Shown here piece after piece: positions 11,936 through 17,987 of a DNA stretch of 64,000 nt. Position numbers and translations under genes: made by a program. Every line of letters starts with the position of its first letter. Position 1 is the stretch's first letter. The notes beneath the pieces were generated by a model that saw nothing but the letters and a program-made list of their open reading frames with translations, made no database searches and was not told the DNA's origin. Location: positions 62,001 through 126,000 of the IMG/VR virus record IMGVR_UViG_3300030419_008158; one strand, written 5' to 3'.

Positions 11936-13105
11936 TCACCCTATAAAAATTGCGCGGCCGTTAGGTATCGGTATTTTCTTGAGAATGTTTGTCAAGCTGT
12001 CAGAAGCCGCGGCTTCGTCCTCAAGCATCTTACTGTAAGTTAGCTCTTCCAGCATTTCAGACAACTTGGTTCTTAAGCTTTCTTTTTCTTCTCTTCCCTG
12101 AGAAATCAGATCTGCGCCGTTTAACTGCAAGTCTCCTCCCGGAATTGGCACAGAAGAAAACTTACTCCTTACAAGCCCTAAAAGCTCCTTTGACAAAGCT
12201 ATTGTATACTGCCTGACCCACTGTCGGCCGACAGAGTTCACCTTAGAGAAAGAAAGATTTCCAAAAGGTACATTTGACATGTTTGAAACCCCATAAATTC
12301 CGGGATCATCAATAGATGGATTCATGGGGTCTGGAGCAAACTGGACTCTCATCCATAATTTTTTTGGATCAGACTTTGTTGGAACGGGAAAAATTCTAAT
12401 ATTTTGCCCGATCACCTTGTAAGAATAATTTGATCGCCTCACCCTGCTCGACATGTCCAGCTGTCCGCCGCGCAGTACGTCCTCGAATACAGGTAAAACA
12501 TAAAAAACAGTTTCAGGCGTAAAGGACTCAAAAGAAAACTCATTGTTCAGGTAGTTTATTGCGCTTGTGCTGTCAAAAAATCTATAAGCTGCCTGGCCTG
12601 AAAAATGAAACACTTCCATGATTTTCATTTTCGAAGAAGATGTGTTTAGACTGCTTGAAAAAATTAAGTTACCAGAATCGTCTTTTAGTGTGTCATAAAT
12701 GTTATAATCTTGCTGATCCTTTACTAGAGTAATAGAGCCTGAGATTGCATTATAAGAGCCCCCGAGGCCCGCTTCCATAGCATACGGCTCAGCTCTTCTA
12801 AGCATAAACTCCAAATTTTCTCTTGGGAATCTTTGCTCGAACCCTTCTAGCGTACCTGTAGCAAATCCCAATAAGTTTGCTAACTGTGATTTAATCTGGT
12901 ATTGGTTTATGAGTGAGCCATATTCACAAAAAGACTCTTCAAAGCATGCCCATATCTGCTTTTTTGTCAATTCCACGCTAAGAACATCATCACCCAGCTT
13001 TCTCTTGACAAACGTGACCATTGCGTCAGCTTCTGTTTGAAACTGCGTGTCGCTGTCAAATAAACCGAACGGGGTGGGATTTAGCGTGTTTAGAAAACTT
13101 GTCAT
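11936..13105 (-). CDS. Neck protein (gp13-like head-tail adaptor)
   Basis: RKLGDDVLSVEL, WVRQYTIALSKELLGLVRSKF and PGGDLQLNG are gp13 hallmarks. Start moved to ATG 13105 behind GGAG. Confidence 0.85.
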   Translation of the reverse strand: MTSFLNTLNPTPFGLFDSDTQFQTEADAMVTFVKRKLGDDVLSVELTKKQIWACFEESFCEYGSLINQYQIKSQLANLLGFATGTLEGFEQRFPRENLEFMLRRAEPYAMEAGLGGSYNAISGSITLVKDQQDYNIYDTLKDDSGNLIFSSSLNTSSSKMKIMEVFHFSGQAAYRFFDSTSAINYLNNEFSFESFTPETVFYVLPVFEDVLRGGQLDMSSRVRRSNYSYKVIGQNIRIFPVPTKSDPKKLWMRVQFAPDPMNPSIDDPGIYGVSNMSNVPFGNLSFSKVNSVGRQWVRQYTIALSKELLGLVRSKFSSVPIPGGDLQLNGADLISQGREEKESLRTKLSEMLEELTYSKMLEDEAAASDSLTNILKKIPIPNGRAIFIG

Positions 13106-13120
13106 TGGCAACTCCAATGA

Positions 13121-13129
13121 CTAAATATC
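13121..13129 (-). promoter_or_regulatory. Putative late promoter motif GATATTTAG upstream of neck genes
   Basis: Exact consensus copy in the intergenic gap. Confidence 0.6.
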
Positions 13130-13148: not shown

Positions 13149-13478
13149 CTAAACGAATTTTTCTACGAAAAGAACTGCTGCCATTAAAAATTGAATCACT
13201 GCAAAGACTGTAATAGCCTTTGTTTTGAATTTTTCAAGATCAGCAACTTGATCACGAAGATCTCTCATTTGACTGGGTGAATATATTTCATCCACTTTTT
13301 CCTTCCATGATCTAAGCTCATCAACCTTATCTTCTCTAACTTGCATTTTAGCAATTTCTTGCTTTACAGTTTGCAATTCATCTTTGAGATTATCAATGCC
13401 GTCAGAAAGTGTCTCTAGCTCTTTGAGAACTAGCCTTGAATACTCGTTCCAGCCATTTTGTTGATCATTAGCCATCAC
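13149..13478 (-). CDS. Coiled-coil protein with C-terminal transmembrane helix (holin-like / membrane anchor, function unknown)
   Basis: Heptad-rich body followed by AITVFAVIQFLMAAVLFV; ATGA overlap with the PAS gene. Confidence 0.6.
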   Translation of the reverse strand: MMANDQQNGWNEYSRLVLKELETLSDGIDNLKDELQTVKQEIAKMQVREDKVDELRSWKEKVDEIYSPSQMRDLRDQVADLEKFKTKAITVFAVIQFLMAAVLFVEKFV

Positions 13479-14029
13479 TCTTCCTCACTTTCTAATAATA
13501 AATGACGCAGCCTACTAGAACTTAGTGCTCTTTCTGCCTTTTGATGAATTATTTTATATGCACCTCTTCTTCCTTGTGTCTCTTTAAAGATATCTTCTAG
13601 ACAAGAAAGTATTATTGCATTCGATGTAACGTCCCAAGATACACCGGTGACTCCGCAAACCTTTCCATTGTCGTCTTTGCGAGGAAGAAGCTTAACATAA
13701 AAAACACTGTCTTTCGACTTGGCAAAATAGTCAACTTTTTCCCCACAAAGAGCTTTTTCATGTTTTTCAATGGACAAGCTCTTAACCTCTGGGCAAAGAA
13801 AAAGATTTTCTAAGCAGTTTGCTTCATGCGCAACAAACCCATTACCTCTTTTTGAAAGTATTGTTCTTTCTAAAGATATAGACCACATAGTCACAGGAAT
13901 AGGAAATGTTTCAAAAAACTCCTCAAAAAGGCGCATGTCTTTTTTTAGCTGATCGTCTCGATCGCTCAATTCGTTAACTAGATCATGCAATCTAGTCATA
14001 CTTTTTCTTCTTGAGGATTTGCTTTTCAT
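13475..14029 (-). CDS. Stand-alone PAS (PAS_4-like) domain protein
   Basis: N-terminal coiled coil, FFETFPIPVTMW, HEKALCGEKV and the PAC-like VKLLPRKDDNGKVCGVTGVSWDVT, followed by a short helix; no output domain. Confidence 0.75.
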   Translation of the reverse strand: MKSKSSRRKSMTRLHDLVNELSDRDDQLKKDMRLFEEFFETFPIPVTMWSISLERTILSKRGNGFVAHEANCLENLFLCPEVKSLSIEKHEKALCGEKVDYFAKSKDSVFYVKLLPRKDDNGKVCGVTGVSWDVTSNAIILSCLEDIFKETQGRRGAYKIIHQKAERALSSSRLRHLLLESEEE

Positions 14030-14308
14030 TTAAAGCAAGCTCTTTACTCGATCCCATACCCAGTGCCAACGTGAGGCGCCGAGTGCTTGCTCCCCTTCTT
14101 TAACGATCAGAAGTATGTCTTCAATATCTTTGGGTGAAAGAGTTCTATCAGCATCTCTAATTGCGCCTCTAACTAGATCCCAATCTGGACCCGCATCTTT
14201 TTTCGGAGCAGAAGCCCTTTCAGCTCCAGCAGCTTTCTTTGGTGCAGACTTCTTTGGTGCAGCCTTCTTGGGCGCTGCGGTCTTTTTTGTCTCTTTTTTC
14301 AATGCCAT
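14030..14308 (-). CDS. Small basic protein with histone H1-like Lys/Ala/Pro repeats
   Basis: KKTAAPKKAAPKKSAPKKAAG; GGAGG RBS before ATG 14308. Confidence 0.7.
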   Translation of the reverse strand: MALKKETKKTAAPKKAAPKKSAPKKAAGAERASAPKKDAGPDWDLVRGAIRDADRTLSPKDIEDILLIVKEGEQALGASRWHWVWDRVKSLL

Positions 14309-14340
14309 GATTTCCTCCAAGCACATTTATTTGACAAATT

Positions 14341-14349
14341 CTAAATATG
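14341..14349 (-). promoter_or_regulatory. Putative late promoter motif CATATTTAG for the three-gene PAS cassette
   Basis: Motif lies just downstream of the MCP terminator. Confidence 0.6.
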
Positions 14350-14385
14350 CCTTCTAACAAAACAGACATACGAATTGTTTGAATT

Positions 14386-14418
14386 AAAAAAAAGGGCCCG
14401 GCCAAAATGACCGGGCCC
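14386..14418 (-). terminator. Rho-independent terminator after major capsid gene
   Basis: Minus strand GGGCCCGGTCA-TTT-TGGCCGGGCCC followed by T8. Confidence 0.9.
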
Positions 14419-14442
14419 AACGAACCAACTTATCTAATCAGA

Positions 14443-16323
14443 TTAGATAATGTTCATATCGAGGCACGTAACTGTACCGTAGAAGTCGGAACGAACCATC
14501 TTCTTACCGTATCGAGTCATGACACCCTTTCTCGGGGTGAAGTCCTCAGGAGCGAAGATAGTAGGCGTTACGATCAGCGGTACGTACGGAGCATAGACGT
14601 AGCCAGTCTCGAGGTAGCTTCCACCCTTGTAGCCGACGAGGACCTTGTTCCGTGGGAAGTAAGGATCCTTGTAGACTGTGAAGCGGTTGCTAAGAGTACC
14701 AACCTTGTCAGCACCGATGACCATTCCGCTTACCTGTCCGTCTCCATCCAGTGAGAACGAAGGCTTGAAGTAAACCGAAGCCTCGAGGATGGTGGCAACG
14801 TCAGGACCGACAACAACAAAGTTTGCCGAGCCGCGGAGCGTCTTACGGTGAATCTCATTTGCAACATCGATGATGGTTTCGATGAGAGTCTCGTACCACT
14901 CACGAACGGTACCAGTGAAGTTCGGACCAGGAGCATTGGAGCCAGTTCTAAGAACTTCTGCACCAGTTTTCTTGTTGACGAACTTACCGGGCGAACGTGA
15001 CCAGTAGTAAGTAGCCGCACCTGCCTGGGTGAGAAGATCATTGAGGATCTCTCGATCAAGCTCTAGAGCGATCTGCTCGGACAGAATCTGAGTAAGCTCA
15101 ACCTCAGCGTCGAGGCTGTGGTAAGCATTCAAGTCCTGTGCCAGTTCTGGAGACCAACGAGCGCGAAGCTTGCGAGTCTCAGCAACAACAGCAATACTCT
15201 CCACCTTGATATCAATCTCTGGGATTGCAGGTGAAGGTGTCGACCCAAAGTCAGATTCAAACGCCGGGATGACGAGAGTGTCTGCAGCATTGGAATCGCT
15301 ATCTAGACCAGCTGAAAGGACCTTACCTAAGTTCATGGTTCCGGCAGCAGTTCCGGCAGCATTTGCACCTGAGCAAATCATCAGCAGCGCAGCATTTGTC
15401 GTGCTAGCTGTTACGAGAGGATCGGGTGTAAATGTAGAACCATCCCAAGTACCAAGCTGGTTGAGACGACGAACGTTAGCTGATGTTCCTCGCTGAATGG
15501 CCTTTCCGTCGGTGTCGTTTCCAACTGCCTTGTACGGACCAACTGCTGGGATTGTGAACTCCTTCACAAGTGAAAGATCAGCATTGTTGAAGTCAGAGCT
15601 ATTATCAAGATCAACGAGGACCGCTGTGTAAACAGCATCACCGCTACCTTCACCGGCACCAACTGAGTTGTTCTCAATAGCATTGGTAATCTGCGGATCA
15701 AACTGCAAGAGCTTTCCGTCTGTACCGGTTGCGACAAGAACGTTTCCAACTGCGAATGTACCCGTTCCAGCATCAGCACCTGATGCTAGCAGTGTTACGT
15801 CAATATTTCCGTAAACACGGGAGAATCCGGATCCAGCAAGGTCATATTGACCGCCAACTGCCAACGATCCAGAGCGAACGCCCTTACCAGCAGGATCATT
15901 GTAAATTGAAGAACCTGTGGGGTAAGGATCGGAATCTCCGACTGATCCAGCCAATGCACCACCGTATGTGTAGTCCAAGTAAAAGAGCAGACCGGAAGGA
16001 AGGCTCATGGGCTGGATGGAAACGAGATCGTTAGCGATGAGTCCGCCAAAAACGCGTCGAACGATCGGAAAAGCGATGTTTGTGAAACCACGAAGATCGC
16101 CTGAAGAAGAAAGGTTGCCGCCACCGGTTGAAACCGAGGAAGCCTCCTTAAGAACCTGACTCGCCTGATTTTCAAGCATGCGAGCCATATTTTCACGGTG
16201 TGTACCGTCGAGGCCTCGAAGCAAACCGGTTCGGTTCCACTTCTCGACCAACTGCTTATTCTGAGAGCCCAAGTGGCGAGCTCGGATCCCCTCAGTCAGC
16301 ATTTCAAGATTAAAACTAGACAT
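14443..16323 (-). CDS. gp23: Major capsid protein (T4 gp23-like)
   Basis: LLRGL..ENMARMLENQ, FPIVRRVF, VSIQPMSLPSGLLF, TRKLRARWSPELAQDLNAYH, YAPYVPL and PRKGVMTRY. Confidence 0.97.
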   Translation of the reverse strand: MSSFNLEMLTEGIRARHLGSQNKQLVEKWNRTGLLRGLDGTHRENMARMLENQASQVLKEASSVSTGGGNLSSSGDLRGFTNIAFPIVRRVFGGLIANDLVSIQPMSLPSGLLFYLDYTYGGALAGSVGDSDPYPTGSSIYNDPAGKGVRSGSLAVGGQYDLAGSGFSRVYGNIDVTLLASGADAGTGTFAVGNVLVATGTDGKLLQFDPQITNAIENNSVGAGEGSGDAVYTAVLVDLDNSSDFNNADLSLVKEFTIPAVGPYKAVGNDTDGKAIQRGTSANVRRLNQLGTWDGSTFTPDPLVTASTTNAALLMICSGANAAGTAAGTMNLGKVLSAGLDSDSNAADTLVIPAFESDFGSTPSPAIPEIDIKVESIAVVAETRKLRARWSPELAQDLNAYHSLDAEVELTQILSEQIALELDREILNDLLTQAGAATYYWSRSPGKFVNKKTGAEVLRTGSNAPGPNFTGTVREWYETLIETIIDVANEIHRKTLRGSANFVVVGPDVATILEASVYFKPSFSLDGDGQVSGMVIGADKVGTLSNRFTVYKDPYFPRNKVLVGYKGGSYLETGYVYAPYVPLIVTPTIFAPEDFTPRKGVMTRYGKKMVRSDFYGTVTCLDMNII

Positions 16324-16370
16324 TTTTATTTCTCCTAATGAATTTGTCTAAACGAATAAATGAATTGGCC

Positions 16371-17987
16371 TTATTTGCCAATTCCAGCCAAGACTGCCCA
16401 TCTATCCGTCTCAACGCCATTCTTGGAAGGCTGTGCCGACCGGGTTGATCTGGAGGACGATCCGAGAGTCCTTCTAACAGACTCGCTAAGGGTCTTACCA
16501 CTACGGCCTCTCCGCGCGAGTGACTCGGAGAGAGACTTATAAAGCAGCTTTGCTTCACGGAGCGTCTTGGCATTATCTAAAGCCTCAACAATTGCTCTTT
16601 GCTGTTTTACAGTCAAGTTTTTATTTTGCAGAAGCTTATTTGCATAAAGCAGCTTCGCATTGAATAGATTCATTTCAACAAGCTGTCTCTTAAGTTGAGA
16701 AGCAGCCTTCTTGTACTCAGCAGCCTCACGAAGTGCTTTTCTAACTGCTGTATTTCTTCGGGCAGGACGTCTTGATCGGGGTCGTCGACTCTCTGTCACT
16801 GTTCCGAGTTCATCTGCAAGAACATTGAGAAGAGTATCTTCGTCGACTTCAATTACGTCACCAACTGACTCTCCGTCACCAAAGTTATCAAGAACGGCAT
16901 CATCGACACCCTCTTCTTGCTCTCTAAGACGACGTGCTTTTCTTAGGCGACTAAGCTCTCGTCGAAGAACTGATTCATCGATCTCATAAATCTCCTCCAG
17001 CTCGACGTCCTCTTCTTCAGCTTCCGCGTCATCTCCGAGCTCTAGATCGTCATCGTCCTCGAGCTCGTCATCAACAACTTCAACATCCAAACCGAGAGCA
17101 TCTCCAAGATCCTCTAGCGCAGTAGTAGCTGCATCAACATCTACATCTTCTCCGCCGGCCTCTTCAACCTCTACATCGTCGACTTCGACCTCTTCGGCCT
17201 CCATCTCATCCTGTTCGTACATTCCTTCTTTCTTCATCTCAGCATCCTCCGCTTCGAAGAGAAAGTCGAAAATGTTCTTCTTGTGCTTCACTGACATTTC
17301 TCTCATCTCCTTTATGGTAGAATTCAGCCTTTTGACGAGGCGCTGAGAACCTCTTCCACTTTGCCGCAAATCGATTTGAAGAGAGACCGCCTCTCTTACT
17401 AGCGATGTGAAGCTTAGTTCGAGTCGATGCTGCTGGTCAGAGCTAATTCGGCTCTCCCTAACAACACCCATTACATCCCGGAGCTTTTTTACTCTTTCTT
17501 CGAGACGTGTAATTCTATGTTCGAGATTTTTATCTTGTACAAAATCTCTTTTGATTAGTTTAGCAAATGCTTCTGCCATTGTGAGATCCGTCATCAACTC
17601 TCCGTCCTCATCGCCCTCTTCTTCGGAAGGCTCGACTTCAATATTGACGTCTCCTGCAGCGAAAACAGAAACTGCAGCATCTGATGCTGCATCCATCACT
17701 TCTTCGCCAAAATCTACATCAGGCATATTATCTACTATGGAATCCAGGTTCAGATCAGCAGTATCCTCAACGGGTTGCATATCTAGGGAATCTTCAGCGG
17801 GCTCTAAAGAAAAATCTTCTTCATCTTCCTCAGCGTCAAACTCTTCCTGTTCGAATAGAATTCTGTTATTGATCATTTTTCTAATTTGAGGAGTTATCGT
17901 TTCCATAATACGATCTTTTGCAGATTGCTCTGCAACCTCTCTTATCTTTTTTGCATCAAGTAATGCTTCGTCATACAATCTAGACAT
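16371..17987 (-). CDS. Prohead core / scaffolding protein (gp22-like position)
   Basis: Highly acidic with coiled coils, EMNLFNAKLLYANK and C-terminal RWAVLAGI; immediately upstream of MCP. Start set at ATG 17987 behind GAGGTG. Confidence 0.8.
   Translation of the reverse strand: MSRLYDEALLDAKKIREVAEQSAKDRIMETITPQIRKMINNRILFEQEEFDAEEDEEDFSLEPAEDSLDMQPVEDTADLNLDSIVDNMPDVDFGEEVMDAASDAAVSVFAAGDVNIEVEPSEEEGDEDGELMTDLTMAEAFAKLIKRDFVQDKNLEHRITRLEERVKKLRDVMGVVRESRISSDQQHRLELSFTSLVREAVSLQIDLRQSGRGSQRLVKRLNSTIKEMREMSVKHKKNIFDFLFEAEDAEMKKEGMYEQDEMEAEEVEVDDVEVEEAGGEDVDVDAATTALEDLGDALGLDVEVVDDELEDDDDLELGDDAEAEEEDVELEEIYEIDESVLRRELSRLRKARRLREQEEGVDDAVLDNFGDGESVGDVIEVDEDTLLNVLADELGTVTESRRPRSRRPARRNTAVRKALREAAEYKKAASQLKRQLVEMNLFNAKLLYANKLLQNKNLTVKQQRAIVEALDNAKTLREAKLLYKSLSESLARRGRSGKTLSESVRRTLGSSSRSTRSAQPSKNGVETDRWAVLAGIGK

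What the first reader, a model, noticed from the sequence alone, without database searches (positions are those of the whole stretch)
13149..14349. Self-contained three-gene cassette with a stand-alone PAS sensor inside the morphogenesis region
Seen: between the MCP terminator (14386-14418) and the neck promoter motif (13121) lies a unit with its own motif (14341) and three tightly coupled genes: a histone H1-like basic protein, a PAS-domain protein with no kinase or DNA-binding output, and a coiled coil with a C-terminal TM helix. The PAS core carries several Cys/His residues (HEANC, LFLCP, HEKALC, KVCG). Known: PAS domains sense redox, oxygen, light or ligands and are unusual in phage structural modules. 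Inference: a late-expressed sensor-membrane module that might tune lysis timing, or jam host two-component signalling by pairing with host PAS kinases through its coiled coils.
Basis: partly seen in the sequence, partly recalled or inferred. Interest (0 to 1): 0.72.

Follow-up and report, generated by a model that had tools for sequence, protein, structure and literature searches.

The report
Phage PAS protein with membrane partner
An uncultured marine T4-like phage carries, between its capsid and neck genes, a stand-alone PAS-fold protein translationally coupled to a small tail-anchored membrane coiled coil; the pair recurs in many related marine phage contigs, but what it does is still unknown.

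Summary
On the minus strand a strong terminator follows the major capsid gene. Then come an ATATTTAG promoter-like motif, three abutting genes, and the same motif before the gp13-like neck gene.

The three genes are not one equally conserved unit:
- ORF3 is the core. It has 540 clusters at 50% identity and 361 IMG/VR loci. A mid-membrane Gln or Asn is kept in 94% of representatives.
- ORF2 precedes ORF3 in 45 of 68 informative loci. In about 20 others a 72-93 aa helical protein takes its place, and some of these share ORF2's N-terminal helix (E about 1e-8). The PAS core is therefore an add-on to a simpler partner.
- ORF1 (a basic tail plus a small domain) occurs only in the nearest relatives.

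The function remains inferred. I favour a cytoplasmic sensor docked on a membrane effector that controls a late membrane event, with low confidence. A complex prediction gave no answer, no RNA run was listed, and no cultured phage carries the pair.

The parts
14386..14418 (-). Intrinsic terminator after the major capsid gene (11-bp stem, 9 G-C pairs, loop 3, T8 tail)
   Evidence: Equivalent GC hairpin plus T-run after the MCP gene in relatives.
14341..14348 (-). Promoter-like motif ATATTTAG, 32 nt before the ORF1 start
   Evidence: Enriched 9 vs 2.5 expected and strand-biased. Related GATA[TGC]TTA motifs before the first gene after the MCP terminator in relatives.
14030..14308 (-). ORF1, 92 aa: Lys/Ala/Pro-rich N-terminal tail (about 35 aa) plus a small C-terminal domain. 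GGAGG at 14314-14318.
   Evidence: Only 3 homologues in 5.8 billion proteins. An iterated HMM finds ORF1-like genes in L008, L009, L027 and L062 directly upstream of ORF2 or of the short partner. No Pfam, PHROG, NCBIfam or PADLOC family.
13475..14029 (-). ORF2, 184 aa: stand-alone PAS protein (N-terminal helix, PAS core, three C-terminal helices)
13907..14020 (-). ORF2 residues 4-41: long N-terminal helix with the conserved L..L..LV.EL.DRD.QLK.D motif. This part is shared with the short PAS-less partners.
   Evidence: An HMM of this segment hits the 83-aa partners of L092, L093, L095, L096 and L114 at E 1e-8 to 4e-8. The next nine hits are also short genes lying just upstream in the ORF3 module.
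13616..13906 (-). ORF2 residues 42-138: PAS core (strands 46-52, 56-62, helix 80-94, strands 99-104, 109-118, 124-133), ending in a PAC/DIT-like G..G..WD(V/I)T.N motif
   Evidence: aligned ranges 42-138. PAS_4 sub-threshold in 18 of 30 family members.
13149..13475 (-). ORF3, 108 aa: tail-anchored coiled coil. Its start overlaps the ORF2 stop (TGATG).
   Evidence: AF2 helices 6-64 and 67-107. 1073 homologues. 540 clusters at 50% identity. 361 IMG/VR loci.
13164..13217 (-). ORF3 residues 87-104: C-terminal transmembrane helix, preceded by FKTK and followed by only 4 residues. Conserved mid-membrane Gln95.
   Evidence: Hydropathy 1.99. Q in 95 and N in 5 of 106 cluster representatives. The Lys-rich N-flank implies an N-in/C-out topology (inference from the positive-inside rule).
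13121..13128 (-). Second ATATTTAG motif, 15 nt before the gp13-like start
   Evidence: The same motif lies at the same place before gp13 in L002, L004, L007, L008, L025, L027, L030, L057, L062, L119 and others.
13101..13121 (-). 8-bp hairpin that buries the GGAG and ATG of the gp13-like gene (start at 13105). Its 5' arm starts at the last base of the motif.
   Evidence: Not part of the cassette, but it marks the cassette's 3' boundary.

Best explanation
ORF2 and ORF3 form a late-expressed two-protein module at the cytoplasmic face of the inner membrane.

ORF3 is the conserved core. It is a tail-anchored protein: an 85-residue coiled coil faces the cytoplasm and runs as one helix into a single membrane span. 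That span carries a conserved Gln, which suggests that it pairs with other membrane helices.

The gene upstream of ORF3 encodes its partner. The partner's defining part is an N-terminal helix. In this clade a PAS domain with an intact PAC/DIT-type end and three further helices is joined to that helix.

I infer three further steps:
1. The partner docks on ORF3's cytoplasmic coiled coil.
2. The PAS domain, by binding a small ligand or sensing cell state, changes how ORF3 assembles in the membrane.
3. This sets the timing of a late membrane event, most probably of the lysis or holin-accessory type. This would combine the roles of XhlA/SPP1 gp24.1 (a C-terminal-TM helper of a holin) and T4 RIII (a small cytoplasmic holin regulator).

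ORF1 is a fast-evolving accessory gene of the same transcription unit, found only in the nearest relatives.

Shown: the folds, the gene coupling, the co-occurrence, and the modular origin of ORF2. Inferred: binding, sensing, and the membrane event.
For: Architecture:
- PAS fold of ORF2.
- ORF3 is helices plus a TM.
- The Lys-rich flank places the coiled coil in the cytoplasm (sequence).

Coupling:
- TGATG overlap between ORF2 and ORF3.
- ORF2-type gene directly upstream of ORF3 in 45 of 68 informative unique loci.
- 29 of 54 gp13-anchored loci have ORF2 and 43 of 54 have ORF3.

Modularity:
- Short 72-93 aa partners replace ORF2 in about 20 loci.
- The ORF2 N-helix HMM hits five of them at E about 1e-8, and the next nine hits are also short genes lying just upstream in the ORF3 module.

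Independent PAS link: a divergent ORF3 relative (P0348) is followed, with abutting genes, by an unrelated bona fide PAS protein (PAS_3 38.5 bits, TIGR00229 6e-15). That protein does not align with ORF2.

The TM is an interface and not just an anchor: Gln/Asn95 is kept in 94% of representatives.

Lysis pointers:
- A distant ORF3-like gene lies directly after a GTA_holin_3TM holin (29.8 bits, above the cut-off; phrog_3427 holin) in L037.
- XhlA is the only named family among ORF3's language-model neighbours (0.92, 174 features).
- SPP1 gp24.1 has the same build and cooperates with a canonical holin (PMC6316719; PMC5589764).

Late timing: the promoter-like motif is shared with the neck, portal-side and other structural genes.
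Against: - No physical interaction is shown. The complex prediction scored 0.11 against a mark of 0.32 and counts neither way.
- No sequence homology to XhlA: the HMM finds nothing in the genome, and hhalign to SPP1 gp24.1 gives no alignment.
- The L037 relative is only 35% identical and was found through a seed pattern taken from ORF3, so it is an ascertainment-biased lead.
- No endolysin, holin or spanin was recognised anywhere in the 284-kb genome, so no lysis cassette can be tied to the module.
- Most contexts are morphogenesis genes: neck, portal, terminase, baseplate.
- No conserved cofactor ligand was found in the PAS core. H90 is lost in divergent members.
- No transcript data are available.
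Confidence: 0.3

Rival explanations
1. Morphogenesis factor. ORF3 tethers an assembly step at the portal vertex (prohead initiation, neck attachment or packaging) to the inner membrane. In function it would resemble T4 gp40. ORF2 or the short partner would act as an adaptor or chaperone, with the PAS fold serving only as a protein-binding module.
For: - ORF3 lies directly before the gp13-like neck gene in most loci.
- Other relatives lie between portal and prohead protease (L050, L051), after a terminase and before a probable portal (L209), or between a baseplate gene and gp13 (L210).
- It shares the late-promoter-like motif with structural genes.
- ORF3 is about as conserved (55-89% identity) as the MCP and gp13.
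Against: - The family is absent from the nearest cultured relatives with homologous MCP (immuto, Mel-JY01, RM378), from LR756508 and from T4.
- In G006, a record of the same clade (MCP 66%, gp13 61%), the module lies about 116 kb from gp13, next to a helicase-like gene.
- In L214 it lies beside a clamp-loader-like gene (my reading of the sequence).
- The MCP-to-gp13 slot is a hyperplastic region that also holds PhoH, an oxygenase and a glycosylase-like gene.
- T4 gp40 has no TM and no similarity to ORF3.
- A plain tether would not need a conserved mid-membrane Gln.
Confidence: 0.25
2. Other host-directed accessory function at the membrane. Examples are superinfection exclusion, interference with a host membrane protein through the Gln-bearing TM, or shut-down of a host envelope process. 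The PAS domain would be an optional regulator.
For: - The module sits in hyperplastic accessory-gene slots and moves within genomes.
- It is confined to one uncultured marine lineage.
- The conserved TM face is compatible with binding a conserved host membrane protein.
Against: - Exclusion and takeover genes are usually early genes, whereas this unit sits behind a late-type motif.
- No match to any PADLOC defence model beyond coiled-coil noise.
- The high conservation and wide spread are unusual for exclusion genes.
Confidence: 0.15
3. Jammer of host signalling. The output-less PAS protein would heterodimerise with host PAS sensor kinases and block two-component signalling.
For: - The PAS domain has flanking helices and no output domain.
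- The nearest structural matches are PAS domains of sensor kinases.
Against: - About 20 of 68 loci keep the module without any PAS domain.
- ORF2 is always tied to ORF3, not free-standing.
- ORF2 evolves fast (29-86% identity) while ORF3 stays at 55-89%. That does not fit mimicry of a conserved host kinase.
- No close cellular homologue was found. All 85 homologues come from metagenome sources, and every context examined was phage-like.
Confidence: 0.05
4. Chance ORFs or annotation artefact.
For: None beyond the small size of the genes.
Against: - Hundreds of conserved homologues of constant length.
- A confident fold for ORF2.
- Ribosome-binding sites and coupled starts.
Confidence: 0.01

Closest known systems
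PAS/PAC sensor domains of bacterial signalling proteins (e.g. TodS PAS1 5hwv, Vibrio sensory-box kinase 3mxq, ThkA 3a0s, CitA cytoplasmic PAS 5fq1)
   Different: - No kinase, GGDEF, HTH or other output.
- Below Pfam's curated threshold: 13.7 vs 23.1 bits.
- No conserved heme His or flavin Cys.
- Encoded by a phage and coupled to a separate membrane protein.
Stand-alone and output-linked PAS proteins of phages (BFVD A0A6J5KZZ3 'PAS domain, uncultured Caudovirales phage'; an ESM Atlas viral PAS_4 cluster of 159 members; phage VP882 VqmA, PDB 7dwm)
   Same: Phage-encoded PAS folds exist and are structural neighbours of ORF2.
   Different: - VqmA carries a DNA-binding domain and is a transcription factor. 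ORF2 has none.
- None of these is described as paired with a tail-anchored coiled coil.
- No sequence relationship to ORF2 was shown.
XhlA (PBSX) / SPP1 gp24.1, Pfam PF10779
   Same: A small protein with an N-terminal cytoplasmic coiled coil, basic residues, then a single C-terminal TM with 2-4 residues after it. It works only together with a second protein, the holin XhlB/gp26 (PMC6316719, PMC5589764). It is the only named family among ORF3's language-model neighbours.
   Different: - No detectable homology.
- XhlA sits in a holin-endolysin cassette of Gram-positive phages. ORF3 sits by neck or head genes of marine T4-like phages, and no lysis enzyme is nearby.
- XhlA has no PAS or helical partner gene.
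T4 holin T with its cytoplasmic regulator RIII (from general knowledge of T4 lysis inhibition; not tested here)
   Same: A small helical cytoplasmic protein that acts on the cytoplasmic part of a single-TM membrane effector to set lysis timing. This is the logic proposed for the short partner or ORF2 and ORF3.
   Different: - T has an N-terminal TM and a large periplasmic domain.
- No homology was sought or found.
- RIII has no sensor domain.
T4 gp40, membrane-associated initiator of head vertex assembly
   Same: Similar size (114 aa) and a proposed role at the membrane in head assembly. It is the functional analogue in the morphogenesis rival.
   Different: gp40 has no hydrophobic span and no similarity to ORF3, and it lies among replication genes in T4.

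Membership tests
PAS domain superfamily (ORF2) | Five-stranded antiparallel sheet flanked by helices, in the order A-beta, B-beta, helices, G-, H-, I-beta | tested here: met
PAS domain superfamily (ORF2) | Sequence match to a Pfam PAS model above the curated threshold | tested here: not met
   PAS_4 13.7 bits vs cut-off 23.1. 18 of 30 family members match weakly, best E 3.9e-4. The PDB profile search gave nothing significant.
PAS domain superfamily (ORF2) | PAC/DIT-type motif at the end of the last strand, leading into a helix | tested here: met
   G126, G129, W132, D133, T135 and N137 are invariant or nearly so. Helix 135-150 follows. That this is the DIT motif rests on general knowledge of PAS signalling.
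Heme, flavin or Fe-S sensor PAS | Conserved cofactor ligand (His on the F-alpha helix, LOV Cys, Cys cluster) | tested here: not met
   H90 is invariant in the close set but is replaced by Phe or shifted in L018, L020, L023, L024 and L026. C143 and the HEANC and KVCG residues are variable. Only C79 is kept family-wide. Actual binding is not testable here.
Two-component sensor kinase or one-component regulator | HisKA/HATPase, GGDEF/EAL or HTH output domain | tested here: not met
   No such domain in ORF1-3. The residues after the PAS core are three short helices.
XhlA family PF10779 (ORF3) | Match to the XhlA profile | tested here: not met
   No match at E<=1 in the genome. 1 of 31 family members reaches E 0.0039. 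hhalign to SPP1 gp24.1 gives no alignment.
XhlA family PF10779 (ORF3) | N-terminal coiled coil plus a single C-terminal TM in a protein of about 80-110 aa | tested here: met
XhlA family PF10779 (ORF3) | Encoded in a holin-endolysin cassette and needed with the holin for lysis | tested here: not met
   The neighbours are MCP, ORF1, ORF2 and gp13. No lysis enzyme was recognised in the genome. Only the distant L037 relative adjoins a holin. The lysis activity itself is not testable here.
Holins | Small membrane protein that forms lethal membrane lesions at a set time | not testable with these tools
   One TM with a conserved Gln. No holin family match.
T4 gp40 (head vertex assembly chaperone) | Sequence similarity to gp40 | tested here: not met
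   hhalign E 0.13, probability 0.4%. gp40 has no hydrophobic span.
Histone H1 / HC2-like nucleoproteins (ORF1) | Match to an H1 or HC2 family model, not only Lys/Ala/Pro-rich composition | tested here: not met
   0 Pfam, PHROG or NCBIfam families. The Atlas neighbours are below noise (0.77), with HC2 in 22% of one cluster.
Co-conserved three-gene cassette | All three genes kept together in relatives | tested here: inconclusive
   ORF2-ORF3 adjacency in 45 of 68 loci. ORF1-like genes occur only in four distinct loci (L008, L009, L027, L062) and in the contigs of P0207 and P0208.

The most novel reading that the evidence does not exclude
A previously undescribed phage switch. An intracellular PAS sensor, interchangeable with a sensor-less helical partner, gates a SNARE-shaped tail-anchored coiled coil whose Gln-bearing membrane helix assembles into, or acts on, a membrane complex. 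This would let a large group of marine myoviruses couple a late membrane event (lysis, or membrane-bound assembly) to the physiological state of the host.
Probability: 0.2. Interest if true: 0.8.

Novelty: new variant of a known kind. Interest (0 to 1): 0.5.

Why it matters
Phages are known to sense signals through a few routes, such as quorum-sensing receptors, arbitrium, and T4 lysis inhibition through a periplasmic sensor. A cytoplasmic PAS sensor wired to a membrane effector in a late operon would be a different route for reading host state.

The ORF3 family is large (540 clusters at 50% identity, 361 IMG/VR loci), is confined to uncultured marine myoviruses, and has no annotation. Natural variants with and without the PAS domain give a ready-made comparison for working out what the sensor adds. 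If the role is lysis timing, it bears on how burst timing is set in abundant ocean phages. If the role is morphogenesis, it would identify a membrane-anchored assembly factor in a lineage that lacks a gp40 homologue.

Tried and rejected
- Complex prediction of 2 x ORF2 plus 2 x ORF3 scored 0.11 against a mark of 0.32. The tool says it is not evidence either way.
- tblastn of ORF2 and ORF3 against 50,697 GenBank phage records found nothing.
- The ORF3 profile against immuto, Mel-JY01, RM378, LR756508 and T4 found nothing.
- The sequence-profile search of the PDB with the ORF2 family found nothing significant.
- Pfam, PHROG, NCBIfam and PADLOC hits for ORF3 are coiled-coil noise only. They include DUF7201, FlgM, CENP-F, Rad50, PbeC and LmuB, all below cut-offs.
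- Search for the lysis genes of this genome. Eight small membrane proteins gave no family beyond weak Rz-like coiled-coil hits for one. Phage_lysozyme, Amidase_2 and SLT profiles found nothing.
- T4 gp40 as a homologue was rejected.
- Whole-length homology between ORF2 and the short partners by hhalign was weak (E 0.0074, probability 5%). Only the N-terminal helix HMM gave significant hits, and the C-terminal HMM gave none.
- Downstream giant proteins of the relocated modules (L033, L035, L081, L129) have no family, no match in this genome, and no match to each other.
- Records that lack ORF3 upstream of gp13 are 7-31% complete fragments, so absence cannot be concluded.
Full report
**Setting**

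The window is bases 62001-126000 of a 284,429-base IMG/VR virus record that CheckV rates complete. Almost all genes are on the minus strand.

Around the finding, in the direction of transcription, the order is:
- an acidic 543-aa scaffold-like protein;
- a 626-aa major capsid protein (Pfam Gp23, E 9e-76);
- the three small genes of the finding;
- a gp13-like neck protein (phrog_211 head-tail adaptor; Pfam Phage_T4_gp13 in relatives);
- two further genes in the gp14 and gp15 positions, the second with only a faint match to the T4 gp15 family;
- a 1049-aa ORF whose counterpart in relatives has a weak sheath-family match.

The nearest GenBank phages by capsid protein are only 38-48% identical: an uncultured 484-kb phage, Microcystis phage Mel-JY01, Flavobacterium phage immuto and Rhodothermus RM378. 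This is therefore a distant, uncultured marine branch of the T4-like myoviruses.

Transcription signals:
- The capsid gene ends with an 11-bp, 9-GC hairpin and a T8 run at 14418-14386.
- ATATTTAG lies at 14348-14341 and again at 13128-13121.
- The 8-mer occurs nine times in the window against 2.5 expected. No shuffle in 100 reached nine.
- Eight of the nine copies are on the gene strand, and six lie 5-32 nt upstream of start codons.
- In relatives the same motif, or a one-base variant (GATA[TGC]TTA), sits before gp13 and before the first gene after the capsid terminator. It is therefore a conserved signal. My reading is a late promoter of the T4 TATAAATA type, which is an inference.

Gene coupling:
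- ORF1 most likely starts at 14308, which has GGAGG 5 nt upstream. Its homologues are 92-94 aa.
- Its TAA stop is followed at once by the ATG of ORF2.
- The ORF2 stop and the ORF3 start overlap as TGATG.
- No terminator follows ORF3. The only hairpin there (13121-13101) has no T-run. It buries the ribosome-binding site and ATG of gp13.

**ORF2 is a PAS protein**

- AlphaFold2 with a 30-sequence alignment gave pLDDT 86.5 and pTM 0.72.
- The model has a long N-terminal helix (4-41), the canonical two-strand, helices, three-strand PAS core (46-133), and three C-terminal helices.
- Foldseek against the PDB, AlphaFold DB clusters and viral BFVD returned PAS domains throughout the top of each list. 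E-values reached 1e-5, 7e-8 and 7e-6.
- At the sequence level the match is sub-threshold: PAS_4 at 13.7 bits against a cut-off of 23.1. It recurs in 18 of 30 family members.
- The family keeps a PAC/DIT-like motif, G..G..WD(V/I)T.N, at the end of the last strand.
- No output domain is present. ORF2 is the only PAS-like gene in the genome.

**The Cys/His argument does not survive comparison**

In the close set, H90 is invariant and C79 and C143 are nearly so. In more divergent members (29-43% identical), H90 is replaced by Phe or displaced and C143 is lost. The HEANC and KVCG residues vary even within the close set. Only Cys79, in an F.C(P) motif, persists.

**ORF3 is the conserved core**

- It has 1073 homologues by word-seeded search.
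- An exhaustive profile search found 540 clusters at 50% identity, of which 209 have E below 1e-10.
- 361 loci in IMG/VR encode a relative.
- Length is nearly constant at about 100-120 aa.
- AlphaFold2 predicts helix 6-64, a break at Ser66-Pro67, and helix 67-107 running straight into the membrane span 87-104.
- The span is preceded by the nearly invariant FKTK and followed by four residues. By the positive-inside rule the coiled coil therefore faces the cytoplasm.
- Across 150 cluster representatives the best-kept positions are W9 (121 of 124), W57-K58 (144 and 134 of 148) and the mid-membrane Q95 (Q 95 plus N 5 of 106).
- A conserved polar residue in the middle of a lone membrane helix points to helix-helix pairing in the membrane, not to a passive anchor. 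This is an inference from general knowledge of TM oligomerisation.

**Co-conservation**

In 73 non-redundant ORF3-bearing viral loci, 68 had enough upstream sequence to judge.
- 45 have an ORF2-family gene immediately upstream, with a gap of -28 to +5 nt.
- About 20 have a 72-93 aa all-helical protein in the same place and with the same overlap.
- The rest have neither directly adjacent.

In a sample anchored on gp13, 43 of 54 loci have ORF3 upstream and 29 have ORF2.

**ORF2 as a partner helix plus a PAS domain**

An HMM of the ORF2 N-terminal helix alone hits the 83-aa partners of L092, L093, L095, L096 and L114 at E 1e-8 to 4e-8 in a database of 2359 ORFs. The next nine hits (E 0.014-0.09) are also short genes lying just upstream in the ORF3 module. 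An HMM of the ORF2 C-terminal helices hits none of them.

ORF2 is therefore best read as a partner helix joined to a PAS domain. Whether the PAS domain was gained or lost is not resolved.

**An independent PAS link**

A divergent ORF3 relative (P0348) is followed, with abutting genes, by a 158-aa bona fide PAS protein (PAS_3 38.5 bits, TIGR00229 E 6e-15). That protein shows no alignment to the ORF2 family. A second, independent pairing of ORF3 with a PAS protein is the strongest hint that the link is functional. It rests on two short contigs.

**ORF1**

ORF1 has only three close homologues and no family. An iterated HMM finds ORF1-like genes in L008, L009, L027 and L062. These have a basic low-complexity tail plus a C-terminal domain with D(P/G)TLS..D and GG.KAL. 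Each lies directly upstream of ORF2 or of the short partner. ORF1 is a fast-evolving companion restricted to the nearest relatives.

**Where the module sits**

- Mostly it lies between the capsid gene and gp13. That interval is a hyperplastic slot. In relatives it also holds PhoH, a 2OG-Fe(II) oxygenase, a glycosylase-like gene, a sulfotransferase-like gene (the last two read from their sequences) and small beta-rich proteins.
- Other relatives lie between portal and prohead protease, after a terminase, after a baseplate gene, next to a ClpP-like protease, or beside a clamp-loader-like gene (my reading of the sequence) and a homing endonuclease.
- In G006, a record of the same clade (MCP 66%, gp13 61%), the module is about 116 kb from gp13.
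- The family is absent from the nearest cultured relatives and from T4.

This pattern fits a mobile accessory module better than an indispensable structural part, although a link to the portal vertex cannot be dismissed.

**What it may do**

Two pointers lead to lysis.
- A 35%-identical ORF3-like gene in L037 lies directly after a GTA_holin_3TM holin. It was found through a seed taken from ORF3, so this is a lead only.
- The only named family among ORF3's language-model neighbours is XhlA.

XhlA and SPP1 gp24.1 have the same build. They act only together with a canonical holin (PMC6316719; PMC5589764).

Against this:
- There is no sequence homology to XhlA.
- No lysis enzyme or holin could be recognised in this genome.
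- The complex prediction gave no answer.
- No RNA run was listed.

**Verdict**

The unit is better described as a widespread two-gene membrane module (a partner helix with or without PAS, plus a tail-anchored coiled coil) with a lineage-specific third gene.

My best guess is a cytoplasmic sensor docked on a membrane effector that times a late membrane event, at about 0.3. A membrane-tethered morphogenesis role follows at about 0.25.

My searches of the paper library found no description of this module, and no cultured phage carries it. It is a moderately interesting, well-defined target for experiment.

Noticed in passing
window 13101-13128 (minus strand); L007, L008: An 8-bp perfect hairpin (GTCATTGG / CCAATGAC) buries the GGAG and ATG of the gp13-like gene. 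Its 5' arm begins at the last base of the ATATTTAG motif. Transcripts started at that motif would lack the arm and be translatable, whereas read-through transcripts from ORF1-3 would be closed. This resembles the arrangement known for T4 genes e and soc. The same pairing occurs in L007 and L008 but not in all relatives.
   Followed up: partly
window 1355, 13121, 14341, 23774, 40828, 58991 (minus strand): ATATTTAG lies 5-32 nt before start codons of six genes. Relatives use GATA[TGC]TTA at the same positions. This is a candidate late-promoter consensus for the lineage.
   Followed up: partly
window 14443-16323: The major capsid protein is 626 aa. The Gp23 Pfam match covers mainly residues 360-616 in two stretches, so the N-terminal half carries a large region not covered by the T4 model.
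   Followed up: no
L013 1264-5344; L014 60-3515: Two tandem capsid-protein paralogues (65-68% identical to the window's MCP) precede ORF2 in these relatives. This may be a gp23/gp24-like duplication.
   Followed up: no
L050 945-4193; L051 951-4199: The T4-type portal gene of this more distant phage carries an intein (Portal_T4 / Intein_splicing / Portal_T4).
   Followed up: no
window 16316-16573 (minus strand): An 85-aa alternative-frame ORF overlaps the 3' end of the scaffold gene and ends at the MCP start. Its peptide is conserved in L027, where it is fused in frame to the MCP ORF. This may only reflect nucleotide conservation of the scaffold gene's end.
   Followed up: no
G000:C1:12392-13340 (outside the window): Two overlapping genes encode 163-aa and 158-aa membrane proteins with coiled coils. 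One has weak Rz-like spanin hits (E 0.02). They are the only spanin-like candidates seen in the genome.
   Followed up: partly
L033 4049-4551; L035 5273-5778; L036 1671-2280: Where the ORF3 module is relocated away from the neck genes, it travels with two further conserved small genes (about 69 aa and 77-81 aa). It is followed, with abutting or overlapping starts, by a large protein (303-1079 aa) with a similar N-terminal helix and no known family.
   Followed up: partly
window 13149-16323 and relatives: The interval between the capsid and neck genes is a hyperplastic slot in this wider phage group. It holds PhoH in immuto and Mel-JY01, and a 2OG-Fe(II) oxygenase, a glycosylase-like gene, a sulfotransferase-like gene and small MPKV..TN.KGLVQ proteins in metagenomic relatives.
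   Followed up: partly
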